Shown in pieces: positions 5,449 through 13,358 of a stretch of DNA of 64,000 nt. The stretch spans positions 1 through 64,000 of the IMG/VR virus record IMGVR_UViG_3300045972_000138. One strand, written 5' to 3'. The notes under the pieces are model-generated. The model was not told where the DNA came from, did not search any database, and worked only from the letters and a program-made list of their open reading frames with translations. Position 1 is the first letter of the stretch. Each line of letters opens with the position of its first letter. Both the position numbers and the translations under genes were made by a program.

Positions 5449-5631
5449 ATGGCGACAGGTAATGCAGGAATGCTTACACCGTACGAGCAAGGCGTTGATC
5501 ACGCCCGCAGCGGATATGACTGGCAGCAAATTTATGATCAACCCGGAGAAGAAATTGAAGCCCAGGATTATAGAAATGGATATTTTAGAACAGTAGAACA
5601 GTTACTTAAAACTGGTAAGGAAATAAAATGA
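5449..5631 (+). CDS. Hypothetical protein
   Basis: 60 aa, coupled to both neighbours. Confidence 0.6.
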   Translation: MATGNAGMLTPYEQGVDHARSGYDWQQIYDQPGEEIEAQDYRNGYFRTVEQLLKTGKEIK

Positions 5632-6674
5632 GAAAATTAGCAACAATTAGAAAAATTAGCGATATACTTCCTATCGAAGGTGCTGACCTTATTGTACGGG
5701 TTAAAGTCGACGATTGGTATTGCGTTGCGTTGAAGACAGAATTCAATGTTGGCGACTTGTGCGTCTATTTTGAAATTGATAGCTTCATCCCTATTATCCC
5801 ACAAGTGGAACACCTTCGCGCCCGTGCATACAAGAAAATGGGCGACAAAGAAGGTATCCGTATTAAGACTATTAAACTGAAGGGTCAGATTAGCCAAGGT
5901 CTTGCATTACCGGTGTCTGTTTTAACAATGATAGAATCTGAGTTATTTGAGGGACTAGATGTATCATTCCCACTAGGTGTAGAAAAGTACGAACAACCTA
6001 TTCCGCAAGAACTTAATGGCCAAGTAAAAGGCAACTTCCCTACATTCATTAAAAAGACTGATCAGGAACGTTGCCAAAATATTGGTTACCAAATCTTTAC
6101 CGAAAATAAGGATGCCACATACGAAGTTACAATGAAGCTCGATGGTACTTCGTATACTGGTTTTCAAAATAACGGCGAAGATGGTGTATGCGGTCGTAAC
6201 TGGCAATTACAGCTCGACGAATGGAATGCAAGTAATGCACTTGTAAGAATGTTCATTGATAGCAAAATGCAATCCGCATTGCAAGCATACGGTAAGAACA
6301 TTGCTGTGCAAGGCGAATTTATGGGTCCAAAAATCCAAGCAAATCGCGAAGGTTTAACTACCTACACATTGTTTGTATTTGATATCTATGATATTGATAA
6401 TCAGTGTCAACTTAGCCCGGATAATCGTAGAGTTGCATTGCAGGCCTTATACGACCTTGGTATGAACAAAGATATGGTTCAGCACGTTCCTATTTTAGCA
6501 TATAATGTGACACTTGCAGATTTAGGTATATCAGATGTAGCTGGATTATTGAAAGCTGCAGAAGGACCTAGTATCAACCATGTAATTCGCGAAGGCGAAG
6601 TCTACAAGCGCATGGATGGCCTGTTTAGCTTTAAGGCTATTTCTAACGCATTCTTGCTGAAAGAAAAAGACTGA
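5628..6674 (+). CDS. ATP-dependent RNA ligase, DRB0094-like family
   Basis: N-terminal MRKLATIRKI..EGAD..GDLCVYFEIDS module; motif I KLDGTS, QGE, FVFDI, EGEV, FKAISN. Confidence 0.9.
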   Translation: MRKLATIRKISDILPIEGADLIVRVKVDDWYCVALKTEFNVGDLCVYFEIDSFIPIIPQVEHLRARAYKKMGDKEGIRIKTIKLKGQISQGLALPVSVLTMIESELFEGLDVSFPLGVEKYEQPIPQELNGQVKGNFPTFIKKTDQERCQNIGYQIFTENKDATYEVTMKLDGTSYTGFQNNGEDGVCGRNWQLQLDEWNASNALVRMFIDSKMQSALQAYGKNIAVQGEFMGPKIQANREGLTTYTLFVFDIYDIDNQCQLSPDNRRVALQALYDLGMNKDMVQHVPILAYNVTLADLGISDVAGLLKAAEGPSINHVIREGEVYKRMDGLFSFKAISNAFLLKEKD

Positions 6675-6716
6675 TACCTTGATAAATAGTACGAACAATT
6701 TATACAGGGGGTTAAT

Positions 6717-6788
6717 ATGGGCAATAGAGACAGACCAGGCAAAGAACCGAAGAAACCAAAGAAACCAGTAGTTCCTCCTAAAAAGTAA
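6717..6788 (+). CDS. 23-aa basic peptide MGNRDRPGKEPKKPKKPVVPPKK
   Basis: Below the track's cutoff; SD AGGGGG and late box GATAAATA at 6681. Confidence 0.55.
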   Translation: MGNRDRPGKEPKKPKKPVVPPKK

Positions 6789-6799
6789 TTAGGAGAGTT

Positions 6800-7489
6800 A
6801 TGCGGTTACAAGAACTCTTCGAGTCCTCCGAAGAAGACAGAGCATTAATTTCTCTGTCTTCCGCCATTTACTCTACTATCAAAACACACGATGGCGATCT
6901 TGGTACAATCGGCGATTTATACGATACATCTATTCCGGTATTAAACAATGTAAGCATATCGGTTAAAAGCGGTAACGAATTTTTAGAATATGCTACCGGC
7001 GCCAATAATATACAAGATCACAGTGGCAAGAAAGTTTATTCTGTATGGGATGCTGACACAAATTCTATTGTATTCAACAAAGACCTAATGCACGAGGATA
7101 GAATGAAAACTTCTGTAACTCACGAATTACGCCACGCATTAGATGAGATTAAATCGGGATCATATAAAGGCGGTGGCCTTGGTTATTTCACGCCAAAGAA
7201 AAAAGAACACAGGGACGACGAGACAACAAAATATAGGGCACAACCTGCGGAAATAAATGCACGATTTTCTGAGATCTTACATAAGCTAACTGATATTATT
7301 CCTAAACGTAAACAAGCGGTAGAACCTGCTGAACTTAAGAATAGGCTTATGCATGACCTCAACCATTTATTGGTCAAATATGAGATTGCAGATTTATTTC
7401 CAGAAAAGACGCAATCACGCGATTATAAGCGATTAATCAACCGAGCCTATGATTTTATAAACAAAGAAACAGCTATGTTGGGTTTATAA
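6800..7489 (+). CDS. Putative head-packaged protein with HExxH zincin-like motif
   Basis: N-terminal MRLQELFE; THELRHALDE; EINARF. Confidence 0.7.
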   Translation: MRLQELFESSEEDRALISLSSAIYSTIKTHDGDLGTIGDLYDTSIPVLNNVSISVKSGNEFLEYATGANNIQDHSGKKVYSVWDADTNSIVFNKDLMHEDRMKTSVTHELRHALDEIKSGSYKGGGLGYFTPKKKEHRDDETTKYRAQPAEINARFSEILHKLTDIIPKRKQAVEPAELKNRLMHDLNHLLVKYEIADLFPEKTQSRDYKRLINRAYDFINKETAMLGL

Positions 7490-7549: not shown

Positions 7550-8020
7550 GTGGCAGAAGAAAATAAAGAGTTTAGTGATTCAGAGATTCGTGAGATGAGA
7601 GAAGCTCGCGAGGCTCGTGAAGCTCGCGAAGCAAGAAGTTTTGGTCGTCGTGCAGCCGATCTCGACGATATGGTAAGCACTAAGACTCGCGTGGCCGTTT
7701 TAGAAAAAATTGCAGAGAATCACGAAAACCGAATTAGTGATATGGAAGATTTTCATAGGTCTGTTGTTGAACGTCTTGACCAAAAAATACAAATGGATGC
7801 TACAAACCAAATCATCATTGAGCGCACATTGACAAAGGCTGTAACATCAATCGATACGTTATCTGAAAATCTTAAGGCTGCTGTGAAAAGTGCAAGCAAG
7901 GCAGAAGAGCTTGCATCAAAGCACGAAACAATTGGGGCGACCGTTATTAAATTAAGCGGATGGATTTTTGTTGCAATTGGCGGCATATGGGCAATAGTTA
8001 AATTTTTCTTAGGTGTGTGA
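7550..8020 (+). CDS. Coiled-coil protein with C-terminal TM helix
   Basis: GTG start at 7550; short REAREAREAR repeat; hydrophobic C-terminus. Confidence 0.65.
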   Translation: MAEENKEFSDSEIREMREAREAREAREARSFGRRAADLDDMVSTKTRVAVLEKIAENHENRISDMEDFHRSVVERLDQKIQMDATNQIIIERTLTKAVTSIDTLSENLKAAVKSASKAEELASKHETIGATVIKLSGWIFVAIGGIWAIVKFFLGV

Positions 8021-8448
8021 TGCTTATACAACTACTTTACATATCTAAACACAATGGTACTACTATTAATAATTTAGATAATTTTATGGCCGCTAATAGG
8101 ACACGAAATAAAGCTAACAATCTAACAAGCATATTGCTTTCTACAGACAAGTATTATTTACATTTGCTCGAAGGTACCCGCATTAGTGTGAATGCACTTT
8201 ACAACAGAATAAGCAGAGATGAGAAGCATTACGACTGCACAATACTTCGCTACATAGAAATAAAATCACGCGAGTTTGACCAATGGAGTGCCGAGCACGT
8301 TAGCATGAATGACTTTATATCCGACGGGTTTAACCTTTTATTCCCTAGGGGCGAAATACACATAGATACGCTTTCTGCTACTCAAGCAGTAACAATTATA
8401 CGAAGAATCCATGCACATTTGCTTGTAAAAGCAGAAATCTCAAGATAA
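8017..8448 (+). CDS. BLUF-domain protein (degenerate flavin site)
   Basis: QLLYIS, RNKANNLTSILL, YLHLLEG, LYNRISRDEKH, REFDQWSA align to the BLUF consensus; Gln->His and Met->Ala. Confidence 0.85.
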   Translation: MMLIQLLYISKHNGTTINNLDNFMAANRTRNKANNLTSILLSTDKYYLHLLEGTRISVNALYNRISRDEKHYDCTILRYIEIKSREFDQWSAEHVSMNDFISDGFNLLFPRGEIHIDTLSATQAVTIIRRIHAHLLVKAEISR

Positions 8449-8487
8449 TAGCGGTTTTAACCCTATTTTAGACACCTTTTTTTCCGG

Positions 8488-8517
8488 TTGACATAAATAC
8501 ATCTATAGTTATATACT
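8488..8517 (+). promoter_or_regulatory. sigma70-type promoter for ncRNA unit 0
   Basis: TTGACA-18 bp-TATACT; +1 near 8524, just before the unit stem at 8528. Confidence 0.7.
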
Positions 8518-8527
8518 ATGTTTATCG

Positions 8528-8753
8528 AGAGTGGGTTCAGCAAACCAAATTATGCCGCAAGGCACTATGGCTAGTTGGGACTTGTGTTTATAAGCAGGAG
8601 CCGAAAGGTGTTGATAGCGTCACTAAACATGCGAAAGCAAACAATCCTAACAAACTACACGGGCAGTAGTTAACACGTCCAAAACGGTGGTAAGGCCCCG
8701 TAGTAATATTATATACCCGCAAGGATTATAATATTATCCCTTACACCACTCTG
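8528..8753 (+). ncRNA. Array unit 0 (226 nt structured RNA)
   Basis: AGAGTGG-GT-TCAGCAA ... CCACTCT-G; four GNRA-capped hairpins and a potential pseudoknot. Confidence 0.75.
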
Positions 8754-8759
8754 TTTTAT

Positions 8760-8788
8760 TTGACAATGTATTGCTTTTGCAATATAAT
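8760..8788 (+). promoter_or_regulatory. Consensus sigma70 promoter for units 1-3
   Basis: TTGACA-17 bp-TATAAT; +1 near 8795. Confidence 0.9.
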
Positions 8789-8802
8789 ACGTAAGAGGTT
8801 AA

Positions 8803-8951
8803 AGGATAGGTTCTGCAACAATCATTAACAATGATCTGATGTAAACTGCGTTAATAAATTCGAAAGGATTTATAAACTAACTGAAAAAGTAAGCGGTTAT
8901 ATCGCCTAGGATTTGTAGCCCTGGTTAAAATAGCTGCTAAAAACTATCCTG
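8803..8951 (+). ncRNA. Array unit 1 (149 nt)
   Basis: AGGATAG-GT-TCTGCAA ... CTATCCT-G; internal GAAA-capped hairpin 8854-8873. Confidence 0.72.
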
Positions 8952-8963
8952 TTTTGAATTTGA

Positions 8964-9059
8964 AGATTAGGTACAGCAAAAAATTAAATTAGCAATATTA
9001 GAGCTTGCTCTAAGATCCTTTCTGGAGGGGAAAGCAAAAACTCGCCAAAACCTAATCTG
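8964..9059 (+). ncRNA. Array unit 2 (96 nt)
   Basis: AGATTAG-GT-ACAGCAA ... CTAATCT-G (stem extends to 9 bp); G-CUUG-C hairpin 8998-9013. Confidence 0.72.
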
Positions 9060-9070
9060 TACTTTATAAG

Positions 9071-9308
9071 TGGATGATTTCAGCATACTTAATACAGCTA
9101 ATGCTATAGAATGCGGCCGGTAGGCTTTATGTAATAGAAATATTACACGTAGACATAATAGATAGACTCGGAGAATCCGAGATATGCATCCGACAGCAGA
9201 CACAAGAATCGGATAGGTAACGTGAACGTTGATAGGGTTGTGAAACTTGAACCAGCATACAGGGGATAGGGCAACCAGAATAATAAAATACCAGTTTCGA
9301 TCATCCTG
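9071..9308 (+). ncRNA. Array unit 3 (238 nt)
   Basis: TGGATGA-TT-TCAGCAT ... TCATCCT-G; hairpins 9130-9147 (GAAA), 9167-9181, 9188-9214. Confidence 0.68.
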
Positions 9309-9330
9309 TTTTATTCTTATGCTTAGAGAA

Positions 9331-9609
9331 ATGAAAATTCGACGTCCTGTTCTTACAGAAGAGGAACAACAAGAAATTCGCAAAAAGTGGCTCGAAGAGC
9401 TTAACGAAAGTAGGATAGGTACAAGTCCTGTAAGGGATTTAGACCACCTAATATATCTGATTGAAGAAAATGCAGGCGCAATACACGATGTAATGCAGGA
9501 TAAAGATGTCAACGGACATTATTCTCCATCGTTGCAGGCATCATTCGACGATACAATGGACATACTAGATTATTTGAGGAAGTTACGTAATCCAGTAGAC
9601 ACACAGTAA
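9331..9609 (+). CDS. Hypothetical protein inside the array
   Basis: The track's start at 9247 lies within unit 3; ATG 9331 (or 9319) gives a hydrophilic ~92-aa protein. Confidence 0.6.
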   Translation: MKIRRPVLTEEEQQEIRKKWLEELNESRIGTSPVRDLDHLIYLIEENAGAIHDVMQDKDVNGHYSPSLQASFDDTMDILDYLRKLRNPVDTQ

Positions 9610-9641: not shown

Positions 9642-9675
9642 AGATTTATAACAGCAAATTTTTAAATTAAATCTG
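9642..9675 (+). promoter_or_regulatory. Minimal array unit 4 / putative translational operator of the DUF2828 gene
   Basis: AGATTTA-TA-ACAGCAA-ATTTTTAAAT-TAAATCT-G followed directly by AAAGG SD and ATG 9689; overlaps a TTGACA-17-TATAAC match (9624-9652). Confidence 0.6.
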
Positions 9676-9688
9676 AAAGGAAAACAAA

Positions 9689-11116
9689 ATGACAACATTA
9701 TTTACAGCAGTAAACGCATCGGCTACAACAGCTAACGGTGCAGTAACAAACGCTTCTTCGTTAAACAAGAACGTTGACCTTTTCTTCTTGGCAGGCGCAA
9801 GCCGTAACAAGGATATTACACCTACTTTCGCTGGTGCGTTGGTAGAAGACTCGGAAGTAGCAGTTCGTGTATTACAGTGGGCGCGTGACGCTCGTGGTGG
9901 TGCAGGTGAACGTGACACATTCCGTAAGTTGTTTGGCTATTTGGTTCGTACTGAACCCGCAATGGCTACTCGTGTATTGGCAAATGTGCCAGAGATTGGT
10001 CGTTGGGATGACTTGTTCATTGCTTTCGGATCTACTTTGGAACGCGATGCTTTGCGTATGATCGCTTCTGCGTTGAAGGACGCGAAGAATGGTTTGTGCG
10101 CTAAGTGGATGCCACGTCAGGGTAAGGAAGCCGGTAAGATCCGTGCTTACATGCAGCTTACACCTAAGCAGTACCGTAAGTTACTGGTAGGTCTGTCCAA
10201 CACTGTTGAACAGAAGATGTGTGCTAACGACTGGACAGGAATTGTGTACCCACACGTTCCATCGGTTGCGGCAGGTCGTTACCAGAAGGCTTTTAAGAAG
10301 CACGATGCGGTAGGTTACGAAGCGTACAAGACAAAGTTGGTTGCTGGTGAAACAAAGATCAATGCATCGGTTGCTTTCCCTTACGATGTGATTCGTTCTA
10401 TGCGTAATGGTGATGAAGTTGTGTCCAATGAACAGTGGAAGGCATTGCCTAACTACTTGGAAGGATCCAATGAAAACATCATGCCGTTGGTTGACGTTTC
10501 GGGTTCTATGGATGGCGTAAGTGTTTCCGGTAGCGTAACTGCTCTGGACGTTGCGATCTCCCTTGGTTTGTATGTTTCCGAACGTGCAGGCGGTGTGTTT
10601 AAGGATCAGTTCATCACATTCTCTGGTTCGCCAGAAATGTTGAAGGTATCTGGTTCGTTGAAGCAACGTTACGACCAAATGGAACGTTCGAACTGGGCAG
10701 GTAACACCAACGTGCAGGCAGCTTTTGAGTTAATTCTTAAGGCGGCTGTAACACATAAGGTGCCAGAGGCAGAAATGCCTACTAAGTTGCTGATCCTTTC
10801 GGATATGGAATTTGACTCCTGCGTAACAGTAGGCGGAACTTCTACAAACCGTTGGGGTGGTGGTGCACAGGTATCCGTAAGTGCAATGGATATGATCCGT
10901 GACAAGTTTGCTAACGCAGGTTACAAGCTTCCACAAATCGTGTTCTGGAACTTGAACGGTCGTGCTGGCAACAGCCCTGTTACATACAACGAAGCTGGTA
11001 CTGCGTTGGTATCTGGATTCAGCCCAAGCATTGTTAAGTCAGTGTTAGGTGGTGAAGAATTGACACCAATCAGCATTATGCTTAAGACCGTAATGGTACA
11101 GCGTTACGACTTCTAA
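9689..11116 (+). CDS. DUF2828-family TROVE(Ro60)-like protein with C-terminal vWA domain
   Basis: WARDARGGAGER, GRWDDL, AKWMPR helical region; MIDAS DVSGSM, NTNVQAAF, ILSDMEFD, IVFWNL, LVSGFS. Confidence 0.88.
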   Translation: MTTLFTAVNASATTANGAVTNASSLNKNVDLFFLAGASRNKDITPTFAGALVEDSEVAVRVLQWARDARGGAGERDTFRKLFGYLVRTEPAMATRVLANVPEIGRWDDLFIAFGSTLERDALRMIASALKDAKNGLCAKWMPRQGKEAGKIRAYMQLTPKQYRKLLVGLSNTVEQKMCANDWTGIVYPHVPSVAAGRYQKAFKKHDAVGYEAYKTKLVAGETKINASVAFPYDVIRSMRNGDEVVSNEQWKALPNYLEGSNENIMPLVDVSGSMDGVSVSGSVTALDVAISLGLYVSERAGGVFKDQFITFSGSPEMLKVSGSLKQRYDQMERSNWAGNTNVQAAFELILKAAVTHKVPEAEMPTKLLILSDMEFDSCVTVGGTSTNRWGGGAQVSVSAMDMIRDKFANAGYKLPQIVFWNLNGRAGNSPVTYNEAGTALVSGFSPSIVKSVLGGEELTPISIMLKTVMVQRYDF

Positions 11117-12851: not shown

Positions 12852-12934
12852 GCTGAAGTCGCATAGCGGCTATTGCAACGCTCTTGTAAGGCGTCGGGAA
12901 ACCACCGTGAGTTCGAGTCTCACCTTCAGCACCA
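12852..12934 (+). tRNA. tRNA-Thr(TGT) with long variable arm
   Basis: GCTGAAG/CTTCAGC, loop CT-TGT-AA, 12-nt variable region with GG-GAAA-CC, CCA. Confidence 0.88.
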
Positions 12935-12938
12935 TATA

Positions 12939-13358
12939 ATGAATAAAGTCTATAACTGCTTATTTTGTAATAAAGAAAATGCGTATGACTTGCACCATAA
13001 AACAAATAAATATTGTGATGCAAAATGCCAATCTGATTTTCAGAACTTGCAAAGACTAAATAATTGGAAAGCAACCGGAAATACTGCCAGGGTTGCCGGT
13101 ACACCTGGGTGGTTAAAGAAATATATTTTAGAAAAGCAGAACGGTAAATGTACTGAATGCGGAATAAGTGAATGGAATAGCAAACCTATTGTATTTGATT
13201 TAGAGCATAAAGATGGTGATAGTAGTAACAATTTAGAAGAAAACTTGTGTTGTATGTGCCCAAATTGTCATAGTCAGACATCGACTTATAAGGGCAAGAA
13301 TAAAGGTAATGGCAGGCATAGTCGTCGAGAACGATATGCTGCCGGTAAAAGTTTTTAA
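12939..13358 (+). CDS. Free-standing HNH (homing-type) endonuclease
   Basis: Start moved to ATG 12939 (the track's start lies inside the tRNA); CLFC..YCDAKC, CTECG, EHKDG..NN..NL..CPNCHSQT. Confidence 0.9.
   Translation: MNKVYNCLFCNKENAYDLHHKTNKYCDAKCQSDFQNLQRLNNWKATGNTARVAGTPGWLKKYILEKQNGKCTECGISEWNSKPIVFDLEHKDGDSSNNLEENLCCMCPNCHSQTSTYKGKNKGNGRHSRRERYAAGKSF

What the first reader, a model, noticed from the sequence alone, without database searches (positions are those of the whole stretch)
8528..8753. Unit 0 is itself a complex folded RNA (GNRA hairpins, multibranch, pseudoknot)
Seen by eye: TGCC-GCAA-GGCA (8553-8564), GCC-GAAA-GGT (8600-8609), TGC-GAAA-GCA (8630-8639), enclosing helix GTTGGGA/TCCTAAC (8574-8580/8645-8651), AACTAC/GTAGTT (8653-8671) whose loop ACGGG can pair with CCCGT (8697-8701), and a long hairpin 8704-8736 capped CC-GCAA-GG. 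Four GNRA loops in an AT-rich genome suggest tertiary folding typical of ribozymes and large ncRNAs. It has its own promoter. Function is unknown.
Basis: partly seen in the sequence, partly recalled or inferred. Interest (0 to 1): 0.6.

Follow-up and report, generated by a model that had tools for sequence, protein, structure and literature searches.

The report
Phage Y-like RNA beside Ro60-like gene
Unit 0 is a real, conserved and apparently expressed 226-nt folded RNA of a freshwater jumbo phage; it is most likely one of four 'Y-RNA-like' partners of the Ro60-like protein encoded next to it, and its end module matches the enigmatic Class I RNAs of Dictyostelium.

Summary
Folding energy alone is marginal (z = -2.0). 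Twenty-six distinct homologues from related freshwater phage contigs give strong covariation. The proposed pseudoknot is not the best supported. A different one is: loop GUAAGG 8690-8695 with CCUUAC 8739-8744, paired in 26/26. The GNRA-rich P2-P3 domain is absent from one natural homologue.

U0 is the first of four tandem units (U0-U3, 8528-9308) sharing only the end module. They lie upstream of a DUF2828/vWA gene (9689-11116) whose predicted fold matches only Ro60/TROVE proteins. The module recurs on the same strand in 49 of 55 sources with this gene, including Listeria phage A511, Felix O1-like coliphages and mycobacteriophages, where one unit is a YrlA-type Y RNA. Metatranscriptome contigs of about 200 nt coincide with U0.

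Short units match Rfam's Dictyostelium Class I RNA model below threshold but full length. Best reading: a new, large Y-RNA-like partner of a phage Ro60-like protein. There is no evidence for a ribozyme.

The parts
8488..8517 (+). Sigma-70-like promoter of U0 (TTGACA-18-TATACT)
   Evidence: 11 of 12 match. A promoter in the equivalent place in 12 of 14 homologues.
8528..8753 (+). U0 RNA, 226 nt: terminal helix, motif, variable domain, core with pseudoknot, and 3' G
   Evidence: RNA-library contigs cover 8531-8728, 8548-8744 and 8570-8766.
8528..8534 (+). P1 5' strand (AGAGUGG); pairs with 8746-8752 (CCACUCU)
   Evidence: 100% paired in 26 sequences, with 3 covarying pairs.
8535..8543 (+). Conserved single-stranded motif GUUCAGCAA (family consensus N-U-N-CAGCAA), the proposed protein-binding element
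   Evidence: T9, C11, G13 and C14 are invariant in A7. The same motif occurs in all units and in Rfam RF01414.
8545..8651 (+). Variable expansion domain. It holds the P2 GNRA hairpin (8553-8564), P3 (8574-8580/8645-8651), P3a (8600-8609) and P3b (8630-8639).
   Evidence: Covariation for P2, P3 and P3a. P3b is not conserved. The whole domain is absent from L007.
8653..8671 (+). P4 hairpin, with a 7-nt loop containing a conserved GG
   Evidence: The inner pairs are 100% paired with AU/UA/CG exchanges.
8677..8683 (+). Conserved joining segment G-U-Y-C-R-A-A, T-loop-like in sequence only
   Evidence: Alignments A4 and A7. A pairing with the P4 loop could not be told apart from chance.
8684..8701 (+). 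P5 hairpin (ACGG/CCGU); its loop carries GGUAAGG
   Evidence: The three core pairs are 100% paired with 3-4 pair types.
8690..8695 (+). Pseudoknot 5' strand GUAAGG; pairs with CCUUAC at 8739-8744, one base before the P1 3' strand
   Evidence: Paired in 26 of 26 sequences. Double changes occur in L020 (U-A to C-G) and in L005, L007 and L113 (A-U to U-G).
8704..8736 (+). P6 variable hairpin, capped by GCAA
   Evidence: A hairpin occupies this place in all 14 homologues, with different sequences and often GNRA or UUCG caps.
8754..8760 (+). U-run after the terminal helix plus G; a probable 3' end or terminator
   Evidence: GUUUU follows the unit in most homologues. This is an inference.
8760..8788 (+). 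Second promoter (TTGACA-17-TATAAT), for U1-U3
   Evidence: 12 of 12. A 536-nt RNA-library contig starts at 8778 and ends at 9292.
8803..8951 (+). U1: AGGAUAG-GU-UCUGCAA ... CUAUCCU-G
   Evidence: Homologues in L021 and L006.
8964..9059 (+). U2: AGAUUAG-GU-ACAGCAA ... CUAAUCU-G, with its own H-type pseudoknot (the loop of CUUUC/GAAAG pairs with CUCGCC)
   Evidence: Alignment A2 of 14 homologues, with compensating changes in L002, L009 and L015. Model R1 scores 25.4 bits.
9071..9308 (+). U3: (U)GGAUGAU-UU-CAGCAU ... AUCAUCC-UG
   Evidence: homologue in L021.
9642..9675 (+). 34-nt mini-unit AGAUUUA-UA-ACAGCAA...UAAAUCU-G, directly before the ribosome-binding site of the Ro60-like gene
   Evidence: R1 scores 25.1 bits. 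It sits in the same place in L002, L006, L008-L010, L012, L013, L021 and L023.
9689..11116 (+). DUF2828 + DUF7788/vWA protein, Ro60/TROVE-like; the proposed protein partner
   Evidence: Pfam and PHROG hits. The AF2 model has pLDDT 80, and its top 13 PDB matches are all Ro60/TROVE.
5628..6674 (+). RNA ligase (PHA02142 OB domain + PF09414); RNA-repair context

Best explanation
U0 is a stable non-coding RNA of a freshwater jumbo phage. It is the first and largest of four tandem Y-RNA-like RNAs (U0-U3).

Each unit has two parts. The first is a constant end module: the 5' and 3' ends pair in a 7-bp helix that starts A-G and ends C-U. This is followed on the 5' side by single-stranded N-U-N-CAGCAA and on the 3' side by G and a U-run. 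The second part is a unit-specific body.

I propose that the end module is the docking site for the Ro60-like ring protein (TROVE-type helical repeats plus a vWA domain) encoded about 0.9 kb downstream. U0's body would then act as the adaptor or gate. The body consists of the P4 hairpin, a conserved joining segment, the P5 hairpin whose loop forms a pseudoknot stacking on the terminal helix, the P6 hairpin and a dispensable GNRA-capped expansion domain. Y RNAs use their body to tether a nuclease or control access to the Ro60 cavity. The context here is phage RNA surveillance or repair, alongside an RNA ligase and many tRNAs.

Shown: the fold (by covariation), the conservation, the linkage to the gene, the Ro60-like fold of the protein, and presence in RNA libraries.

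Inferred: binding of the module to the protein, the RNA's exact ends, and the role of the body.
For: 1. Structure. P1, P2, P3, P3a, P4, P5 and the pseudoknot covary in 14-26 distinct homologues. Overall, 92% of cells are paired against 33-56% with slid partners, and 0 of 500 shuffles reach the observed covariation.

2. Shared module. The four units in the gap 8449-9330 share only the end module.

3. The protein. The 9689-11116 product is DUF2828 + DUF7788/vWA and belongs to PHROG 850, 'RNA-binding protein'. The top 13 PDB matches of its model are all Ro60/TROVE, over the full length (E 1e-10 to 1e-5). The best match is the Thermus phage phiLo Ro60.

4. Linkage. A covariance model of the module (R1) finds units in 49 of 55 sources that carry this gene. 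Of 70 hits, 69 are on the gene's strand, mostly within about 0.5 kb of it.

5. Cultured phages.
- Listeria phage A511 has three units directly upstream of the gene.
- Felix O1-like phage garuso has units between the tRNAs just downstream of it.
- Mycobacteriophage Jubie has three tandem units after its 'Ro-like RNA binding protein' gene. All carry ACAGCAA, and the middle one matches Rfam YrlA (39.3 bits, E 2e-5).

6. Precedent. Bacterial and phage Ro60 genes have Y RNAs within 4 kb on the same strand (PMC4201824). The phiLo Ro60 binds two Y-like RNAs encoded upstream of it and joins host PNPase (PMC12135203).

7. Expression. In three freshwater metatranscriptome runs, contigs of 197-211 nt cover 8531-8728, 8548-8744 and 8570-8766, and a 536-nt contig covers U1-U3. 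No RNA-library contig lies on the flanking coding DNA at 8440-8525 or 9300-9600.
Against: - No binding data exist.
- U0 lacks the canonical Ro-binding motifs (GGUCCGA, GNCGAAN0-1G, CGAA). It matches neither the Rfam Y_RNA nor the YrlA model at E <= 10.
- Short units also occur tens of kb from the gene within tRNA clusters, so adjacency is not strict.
- The loci were chosen for having the gene, so the association lacks a gene-free control set.
- The RNA evidence comes from assembled contigs of close relatives (93-97% identity). Such contigs cannot prove transcript ends or exclude DNA carry-over.
- The function of U0's own body is unknown.
Confidence: 0.65

Rival explanations
1. The units are stable RNAs that act independently of the Ro60-like protein. 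They could be decoys or sponges for host RNases, anticodon nucleases or another RNA-binding protein, or processing spacers of tRNA operons. Linkage to the gene would then reflect a shared 'RNA module' of the genome only.
For: - Short units lie inside tRNA clusters far from the gene. Examples are G000:178973-179026, 4 nt before a tRNA, and several in G003.
- In L025 the module replaces the anticodon loop of two tRNA-like RNAs.
- The one direct binder reported for the Dictyostelium Class I RNAs, which have the same module, is an RRM protein, Rnp1A (PMC7919456).
Against: - Same-strand adjacency to the gene holds across clades that share only 31-52% protein identity, even though the units have moved from upstream to downstream of the gene.
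- A mini-unit sits in the gene's own leader.
- One unit type is a YrlA-class Y RNA.
Confidence: 0.17
2. U0 is a ribozyme, either self-cleaving or otherwise catalytic. Its GNRA loops and pseudoknot would build an active site.
For: - The fold is multibranched, with four GNRA loops and a pseudoknot.
- The units are tandem and have precisely conserved ends (AG ... CUG) that could be processing sites.
Against: - No known ribozyme or large-RNA family matches, even at E <= 10.
- The domain with three of the four GNRA loops is dispensable in L007.
- Units as short as 52 nt, with unstructured bodies, share the same ends, so the ends do not depend on U0's fold.
- U0 has its own promoter placed at its 5' end.
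Confidence: 0.04
3. U0 is a cis-acting leader or riboswitch that controls the downstream genes.
For: It lies upstream of genes on the same strand, and it is highly structured.
Against: - U0 is followed by a U-run and a second perfect promoter.
- RNA-library contigs of about 200 nt match the unit alone.
- Homologous modules lie downstream of the gene or between tRNAs in other phages.
- No riboswitch family matches.
Confidence: 0.04

Closest known systems
Bacterial and phage Y RNAs (YrlA/YrlB, Yrn1; Yrl1/Yrl2 of Thermus phage phiLo), bound by Ro60/Rsr
   Same: - They are encoded in small arrays within a few kb of a Ro60-type TROVE+vWA gene, on the same strand.
- The 5' and 3' ends pair in a terminal stem, with a conserved single-stranded or bulged motif on the 5' strand.
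- The design is modular: a constant protein-binding end plus a variable effector body. Several different Y RNAs occur per genome.
- In mycobacteriophage Jubie, a unit with this very module scores as YrlA (PMC4201824; PMC12135203).
   Different: - The motif is N-U-N-CAGCAA, not GGUCCGA, GNCGAAN0-1G or CGAA.
- The protein is the DUF2828 branch. It has no sequence match to solved Ro60 structures, only a fold match.
- U0's body is not tRNA-like. It is a 200-nt multibranch with an H-type pseudoknot stacked on the terminal helix.
- U0 is about twice the size of typical Y RNAs.
Dictyostelium Class I RNAs (Rfam RF01414)
   Same: - The 5' G is conserved, and a short covarying stem joins the ends.
- (C)UUACAGCAA lies directly after the 5' strand. 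The 3' end is C-U-G and is followed by a T-run. The body is variable, and there are many copies per genome.
- Short phage units match the whole model at 24.9-31.9 bits, exactly at independently defined unit borders. One of them is in this same genome.
   Different: - All scores lie below the gathering score of 41.5.
- The linker between the stem and CAGCAA is one base shorter in the phage units.
- U0 itself is 226 nt and structured, against 42-65 nt, and is not found by the model.
- The promoter is bacterial rather than DUSE.
- Class I RNAs are reported as unique to Dictyostelia and bound by the RRM protein Rnp1A (PMC7919456). A link to a DUF2828 protein in amoebae has not been tested.
Small stable RNAs embedded in phage tRNA clusters (from my own knowledge, e.g. 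T4 species 1 and 2 RNAs)
   Same: They are non-tRNA stable RNAs, co-located and probably co-processed with phage tRNAs.
   Different: No sequence or structural comparison was made here. This is a recalled resemblance only.

Membership tests
Y RNA / YrlA (Rfam RF00019, RF02553) | Encoded within about 4 kb of a Ro60/TROVE-vWA gene, on the same strand | tested here: met
   U0 ends 936 nt upstream of the 9689-11116 gene, on the same strand. The protein model matches only Ro60/TROVE structures at the top of the list. The linkage holds in 49 of 55 sources.
Y RNA / YrlA (Rfam RF00019, RF02553) | The 5' and 3' ends pair in a terminal stem | tested here: met
   P1 (8528-8534/8746-8752) is 100% paired in 26 sequences, with 3 covarying pairs.
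Y RNA / YrlA (Rfam RF00019, RF02553) | A conserved Ro-binding motif (GGUCCGA, GNCGAAN0-1G or CGAA) in the 5' strand region | tested here: not met
   U0 has GUUCAGCAA at that position. The motif definitions come from PMC4201824 and PMC12135203.
Y RNA / YrlA (Rfam RF00019, RF02553) | A tRNA-like domain with T and D arms (YrlA subclass) | tested here: not met
   Neither the tRNA nor the YrlA model matches U0 at E <= 10. Such a domain is present in sister units elsewhere: L025:6154-6288, L013:6941-7052 and Jubie L102:4570-4678.
Y RNA / YrlA (Rfam RF00019, RF02553) | Score at or above the Rfam gathering threshold | tested here: not met
Y RNA / YrlA (Rfam RF00019, RF02553) | Physical binding to the Ro60 orthologue | not testable with these tools
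   This needs EMSA, RIP or a structure.
Dictyostelium Class I RNA (RF01414) | A conserved 5' G and a short covarying stem joining the ends | tested here: met
   G8529 is invariant, and P1 covaries.
Dictyostelium Class I RNA (RF01414) | The 11-nt motif CCUUACAGCAA next to the 5' strand (U3, C6, C9, A10 and A11 near-invariant) | tested here: inconclusive
   U0 has GGGUUCAGCAA. C6, C9, A10 and A11 are present, but the U is shifted by one position. Short sister units have the exact UUACAGCAA or CUUACAGCAA.
Dictyostelium Class I RNA (RF01414) | A conserved 3' end, C-U-G | tested here: met
   8751-8753 is CUG, invariant in 26 sequences. The Rfam consensus ends in CUG.
Dictyostelium Class I RNA (RF01414) | Length of about 42-65 nt with a variable, largely unstructured body | tested here: not met
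   U0 is 226 nt with a conserved multibranch body.
Dictyostelium Class I RNA (RF01414) | Score at or above the gathering threshold (41.5 bits) | tested here: not met
   U0 gives no hit. Short sister units score 24.9-31.9 bits.
Known ribozymes and large structured RNAs in Rfam (twister, hammerhead, HDV-like, pistol, hatchet, GOLLD, ROOL, OLE, raiA and others) | A match to the family's covariance model | tested here: not met
   Between 8300 and 9400, only two noise hits to snoRNA models appear at E <= 10.

The most novel reading that the evidence does not exclude
The module 'terminal stem + (C)UUACAGCAA + 3' CUG' is the recognition element of DUF2828-type Ro60-like proteins wherever that protein family occurs. 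If so, the Class I RNAs of Dictyostelium would be Y RNAs of an amoebal DUF2828 protein, related to the phage RNAs described here. Their molecular function is still unknown, and they are thought to be unique to social amoebae. U0 would then show that the same module can carry a large pseudoknotted cargo domain.
Probability: 0.3. Interest if true: 0.85.

Novelty: new variant of a known kind. Interest (0 to 1): 0.72.

Why it matters
It turns an anonymous 'folded RNA' into a testable ribonucleoprotein hypothesis with cultured model systems: Listeria phage A511, Felix O1-like coliphages, Vibrio nt-1-like phages and mycobacteriophages.

The Ro60-like DUF2828 protein is very common. It occurs in at least 710 cultured phage records and about 8000 metagenomic protein clusters. 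Outside mycobacteriophages, I found no description of RNA partners for it.

The units reveal a simple, searchable RNA module that is not in Rfam as a phage family. They also show that Y-like RNAs can carry very different bodies:
- none, in units of 52 nt;
- tRNA mimics;
- tRNAs with the module in place of the anticodon loop;
- U0's 200-nt pseudoknotted fold.

The match to Dictyostelium Class I RNAs, if it reflects a shared protein partner, would give the first mechanistic lead for those RNAs.

Tried and rejected
- **Rfam.** With gathering thresholds on the whole window, only 12 tRNAs matched. At E <= 10 on 8300-9400, only noise appeared.
- **blastn.** The gap 8400-9400 against 50,697 phage records gave no match.
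- **Folding energy.** It is marginal as the only criterion.
It is 75% paired and competes with a better-supported local hairpin. It is kept only as a possible alternative conformer.
- **A 4-bp contact between the P4 loop (GGGC) and the joining segment (GUCC).** The pairs hold, but purine/pyrimidine columns pair by chance, so this is inconclusive.
- **A tRNA-like reading of U0's core.** There is a D-like hairpin and a T-loop-like UYCRA, but no model support.
- **Model R1.** It cannot span U0 (7.2 bits) because of the 200-nt insert.
- **Sequence search of the protein against PDB chains.** Nothing was found; only the fold search worked.
- **Word search with the protein alignment.** It returned about 8000 near-identical-length phage-type clusters and no information on eukaryotes. 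The Atlas search was equally uninformative.
- **Literature.** DUF2828 and UCP015417 searches found only plant and tardigrade mentions. Avesson 2011 and Burroughs & Aravind 2016 are not held.
- **Exact pattern scan of viral contigs for U0's 3' end.** Eight of 19 hits were chance matches in coding DNA and were discarded.

Full report
**Setting.** The window is the first 64 kb of a 237.6-kb IMG/VR virus record. It has about 39% G+C and 13 tRNA genes, and its nearest DNA relatives come from pond and lake metagenomes. The finding lies in an 880-nt gap without ORFs (8449-9330). On one side is a BLUF-domain gene (8017-8448). On the other are a small ORF (9331-9609) and then a 475-aa gene (9689-11116). 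An RNA ligase gene lies at 5628-6674.

**Checking the observation.** The promoter is real as a consensus match (TTGACA-18-TATACT, 8488-8517). The minimum free energy is only marginally better than shuffles: z = -2.0, with 7 of 200 shuffles as good, and -1.5 on the other strand.

**Relatives.** I fetched 80 viral contigs that encode a relative of the downstream protein. The closest ones (72-83% protein identity) carry U0 homologues of 206-268 nt. One natural 120-nt version (L007) lacks everything between the 5' motif and the P4 hairpin. A scan of metagenome contigs with a conserved core word added 13 more distinct homologues.

**Covariation in 26 distinct sequences** (P6):

| Helix | Result |
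|---|---|
| P1, terminal helix (8528-8534/8746-8752) | 100% paired, three covarying pairs |
| P2, GNRA hairpin (8553-8564) | covaries; 94% paired in the 14-sequence alignment A4, 77-85% in the 26-sequence A7 |
| P3 (8574-8580/8645-8651) | covaries |
| P3a (8600-8609) | covaries |
| P4 (8653-8671) | inner pairs always paired, with AU/UA/CG exchanges |
| P5 (8684-8687/8698-8701) | three pairs 100% paired, with 3-4 pair types |
| P6 (8704-8736) | a hairpin in every homologue, with a different sequence |
| TGC-GAAA-GCA (8630-8639) | not conserved |

Overall, 92% of cells are paired against 33-56% when partners are slid. None of 500 shuffles reaches the observed covariation.

**The pseudoknot.** This is 75% paired but uses the same 3' strand as the better-supported P5. 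A different pseudoknot is strongly supported. The P5 loop GUAAGG (8690-8695) pairs with CCUUAC (8739-8744), one base before the P1 3' strand. It is paired in 26 of 26 sequences, with double changes in L020 and in L005, L007 and L113.

**What it belongs to.** The gap holds four units: U0 (8528-8753), U1 (8803-8951), U2 (8964-9059) and U3 (9071-9308). They share only an end module:
- a 7-bp helix joining the ends, starting A-G and ending C-U;
- then N-U-N-CAGCAA on the 5' side;
- then G and usually a U-run on the 3' side.

In the whole 237-kb genome, a strict version of this signature clusters only here, apart from 4 scattered hits. Shuffled genomes give about 0.45. U2 has its own covarying H-type pseudoknot next to the terminal helix.

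In more distant contigs (about 51% protein identity) the same module occurs just downstream of the gene. The stems there are completely different and the bodies are as short as about 25 nt, giving units of 52-62 nt. A covariance model built from nine short units (R1) finds units in 49 of 55 sources. Of 70 hits, 69 are on the strand of the gene.

**The neighbouring protein.** It is DUF2828 + DUF7788/vWA and belongs to PHROG 850, 'RNA-binding protein'. It has no sequence match to solved structures. Its AlphaFold model has pLDDT 80 and pTM 0.76. The 13 best PDB matches of that model are all Ro60/TROVE proteins over the full length. The best is the Ro60 of Thermus phage phiLo.

Ro60 proteins bind Y RNAs. 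These are encoded within a few kb on the same strand, have paired ends with a conserved 5'-strand motif, and have variable bodies, often a tRNA mimic (PMC4201824). The phiLo protein binds two such RNAs encoded upstream of it and assembles with host PNPase (PMC12135203).

**Cultured phages.** Homologues of the protein occur in 710 cultured phage records.
- In Listeria phage A511, three units lie directly upstream of the gene.
- In the Felix O1-like coliphage garuso, units sit between the tRNAs just after it.
- In mycobacteriophage Jubie, three tandem units follow the 'Ro-like RNA binding protein' gene. All three carry ACAGCAA after the 5' strand, and the middle one matches Rfam YrlA (39.3 bits, E 2e-5).
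- In contig L025, two RNAs score as tRNA (56.9 and 40.9 bits). Their anticodon loop is replaced by the same module, with its helix closed by a tetraloop. This is a circular permutation, which shows that the helix-plus-motif is the conserved element.

**Expression.** Three freshwater metatranscriptome runs from two studies hold contigs of close relatives.
- Contigs of 197, 206 and 211 nt lie on 8531-8728, 8548-8744 (preceded by CAGCAAACC) and 8570-8766.
- One 536-nt contig runs from 8778, at the second promoter, to 9292, and so covers U1-U3.
- No RNA-library contig lies on the flanking coding DNA within the stretch searched.

This fits U0 as a separate ~225-nt RNA and U1-U3 as one precursor. 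Contigs cannot prove ends or exclude DNA carry-over.

**An unexpected resemblance.** Rfam's model of Dictyostelium Class I RNAs (RF01414) matches the short phage units over its whole length and exactly at their borders. It does so in eight places at 24.9-31.9 bits (gathering score 41.5). One of these is G000:178974-179026 in this same genome. It produced no other hit in about 120 kb.

The model's consensus is a 5' G, a 6-bp stem, CUUACAGCAA, a variable body and a 3' C-U-G. That is the phage module, with a linker one base longer. Class I RNAs are described as unique to Dictyostelia and of unknown molecular function (PMC7919456). I could not test whether dictyostelids encode a DUF2828 protein.

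**Conclusion.** U0 is a genuine structured RNA. It is best explained as a new, large member of a family of Y-RNA-like partners of a phage Ro60-like protein. Binding, and the role of U0's body, are inferred rather than shown. Nothing supports a ribozyme.

Noticed in passing
window 9642-9675: A 34-nt mini-unit (AGAUUUA-UA-ACAGCAA...UAAAUCU-G) sits directly before the ribosome-binding site and ATG of the Ro60-like gene. It overlaps a TTGACA-17-TATAAC promoter-like site. It is found in the same place in at least nine relatives, and could be an autoregulatory operator that mimics the RNA partners.
   Followed up: partly
window 8017-8448: This jumbo phage encodes a BLUF (blue-light sensor using FAD) domain protein, immediately upstream of the RNA array (Pfam E 6e-22).
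   Followed up: no
G000:C1:178973-179026 (outside the window; locus L104:474-527): A 54-nt unit with the exact CUUACAGCAA motif lies 4 nt before a tRNA gene, about 170 kb from the Ro60-like gene. Related jumbo genomes (G001-G003) also have dispersed short units.
   Followed up: partly
L025:5895-6137: Two tandem tRNA-like RNAs have perfect acceptor, D and T arms. Their anticodon loop is replaced by about 55 nt that contains the module as a capped hairpin (GCAAACU-GAYA-AGUUUGU-AUUCAGCA). A third unit (6154-6288) is a YrlA-style permuted tRNA mimic.
   Followed up: partly
L101 (Listeria phage A511, NC_009811.2) 1465-2016 and 5809-7020: A ROOL RNA match (87.5 bits, just under the gathering score of 99.1) and an RtcB-type 'tRNA splicing ligase' gene flank the three units and the Ro60-like gene of A511.
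   Followed up: no
L100 (Escherichia phage garuso) 4755-4821, 4921-4980, 5377-5445: In a Felix O1-like coliphage, units with the stem AGACC.../...GGUCU are interleaved with the genes of the tRNA array. None is annotated in the record.
   Followed up: partly
L049:7722-8213: A phage contig encodes a tmRNA (Rfam 87.3 bits) about 2 kb from its Ro60-like gene.
   Followed up: no
window 12852-13358: An HNH-endonuclease-like ORF (12873-13358, as listed from a TTG start) overlaps tRNA-Thr(UGU) at 12852-12934. The real start is probably later. Several tRNAs here are unusually long (83-92 nt).
   Followed up: no
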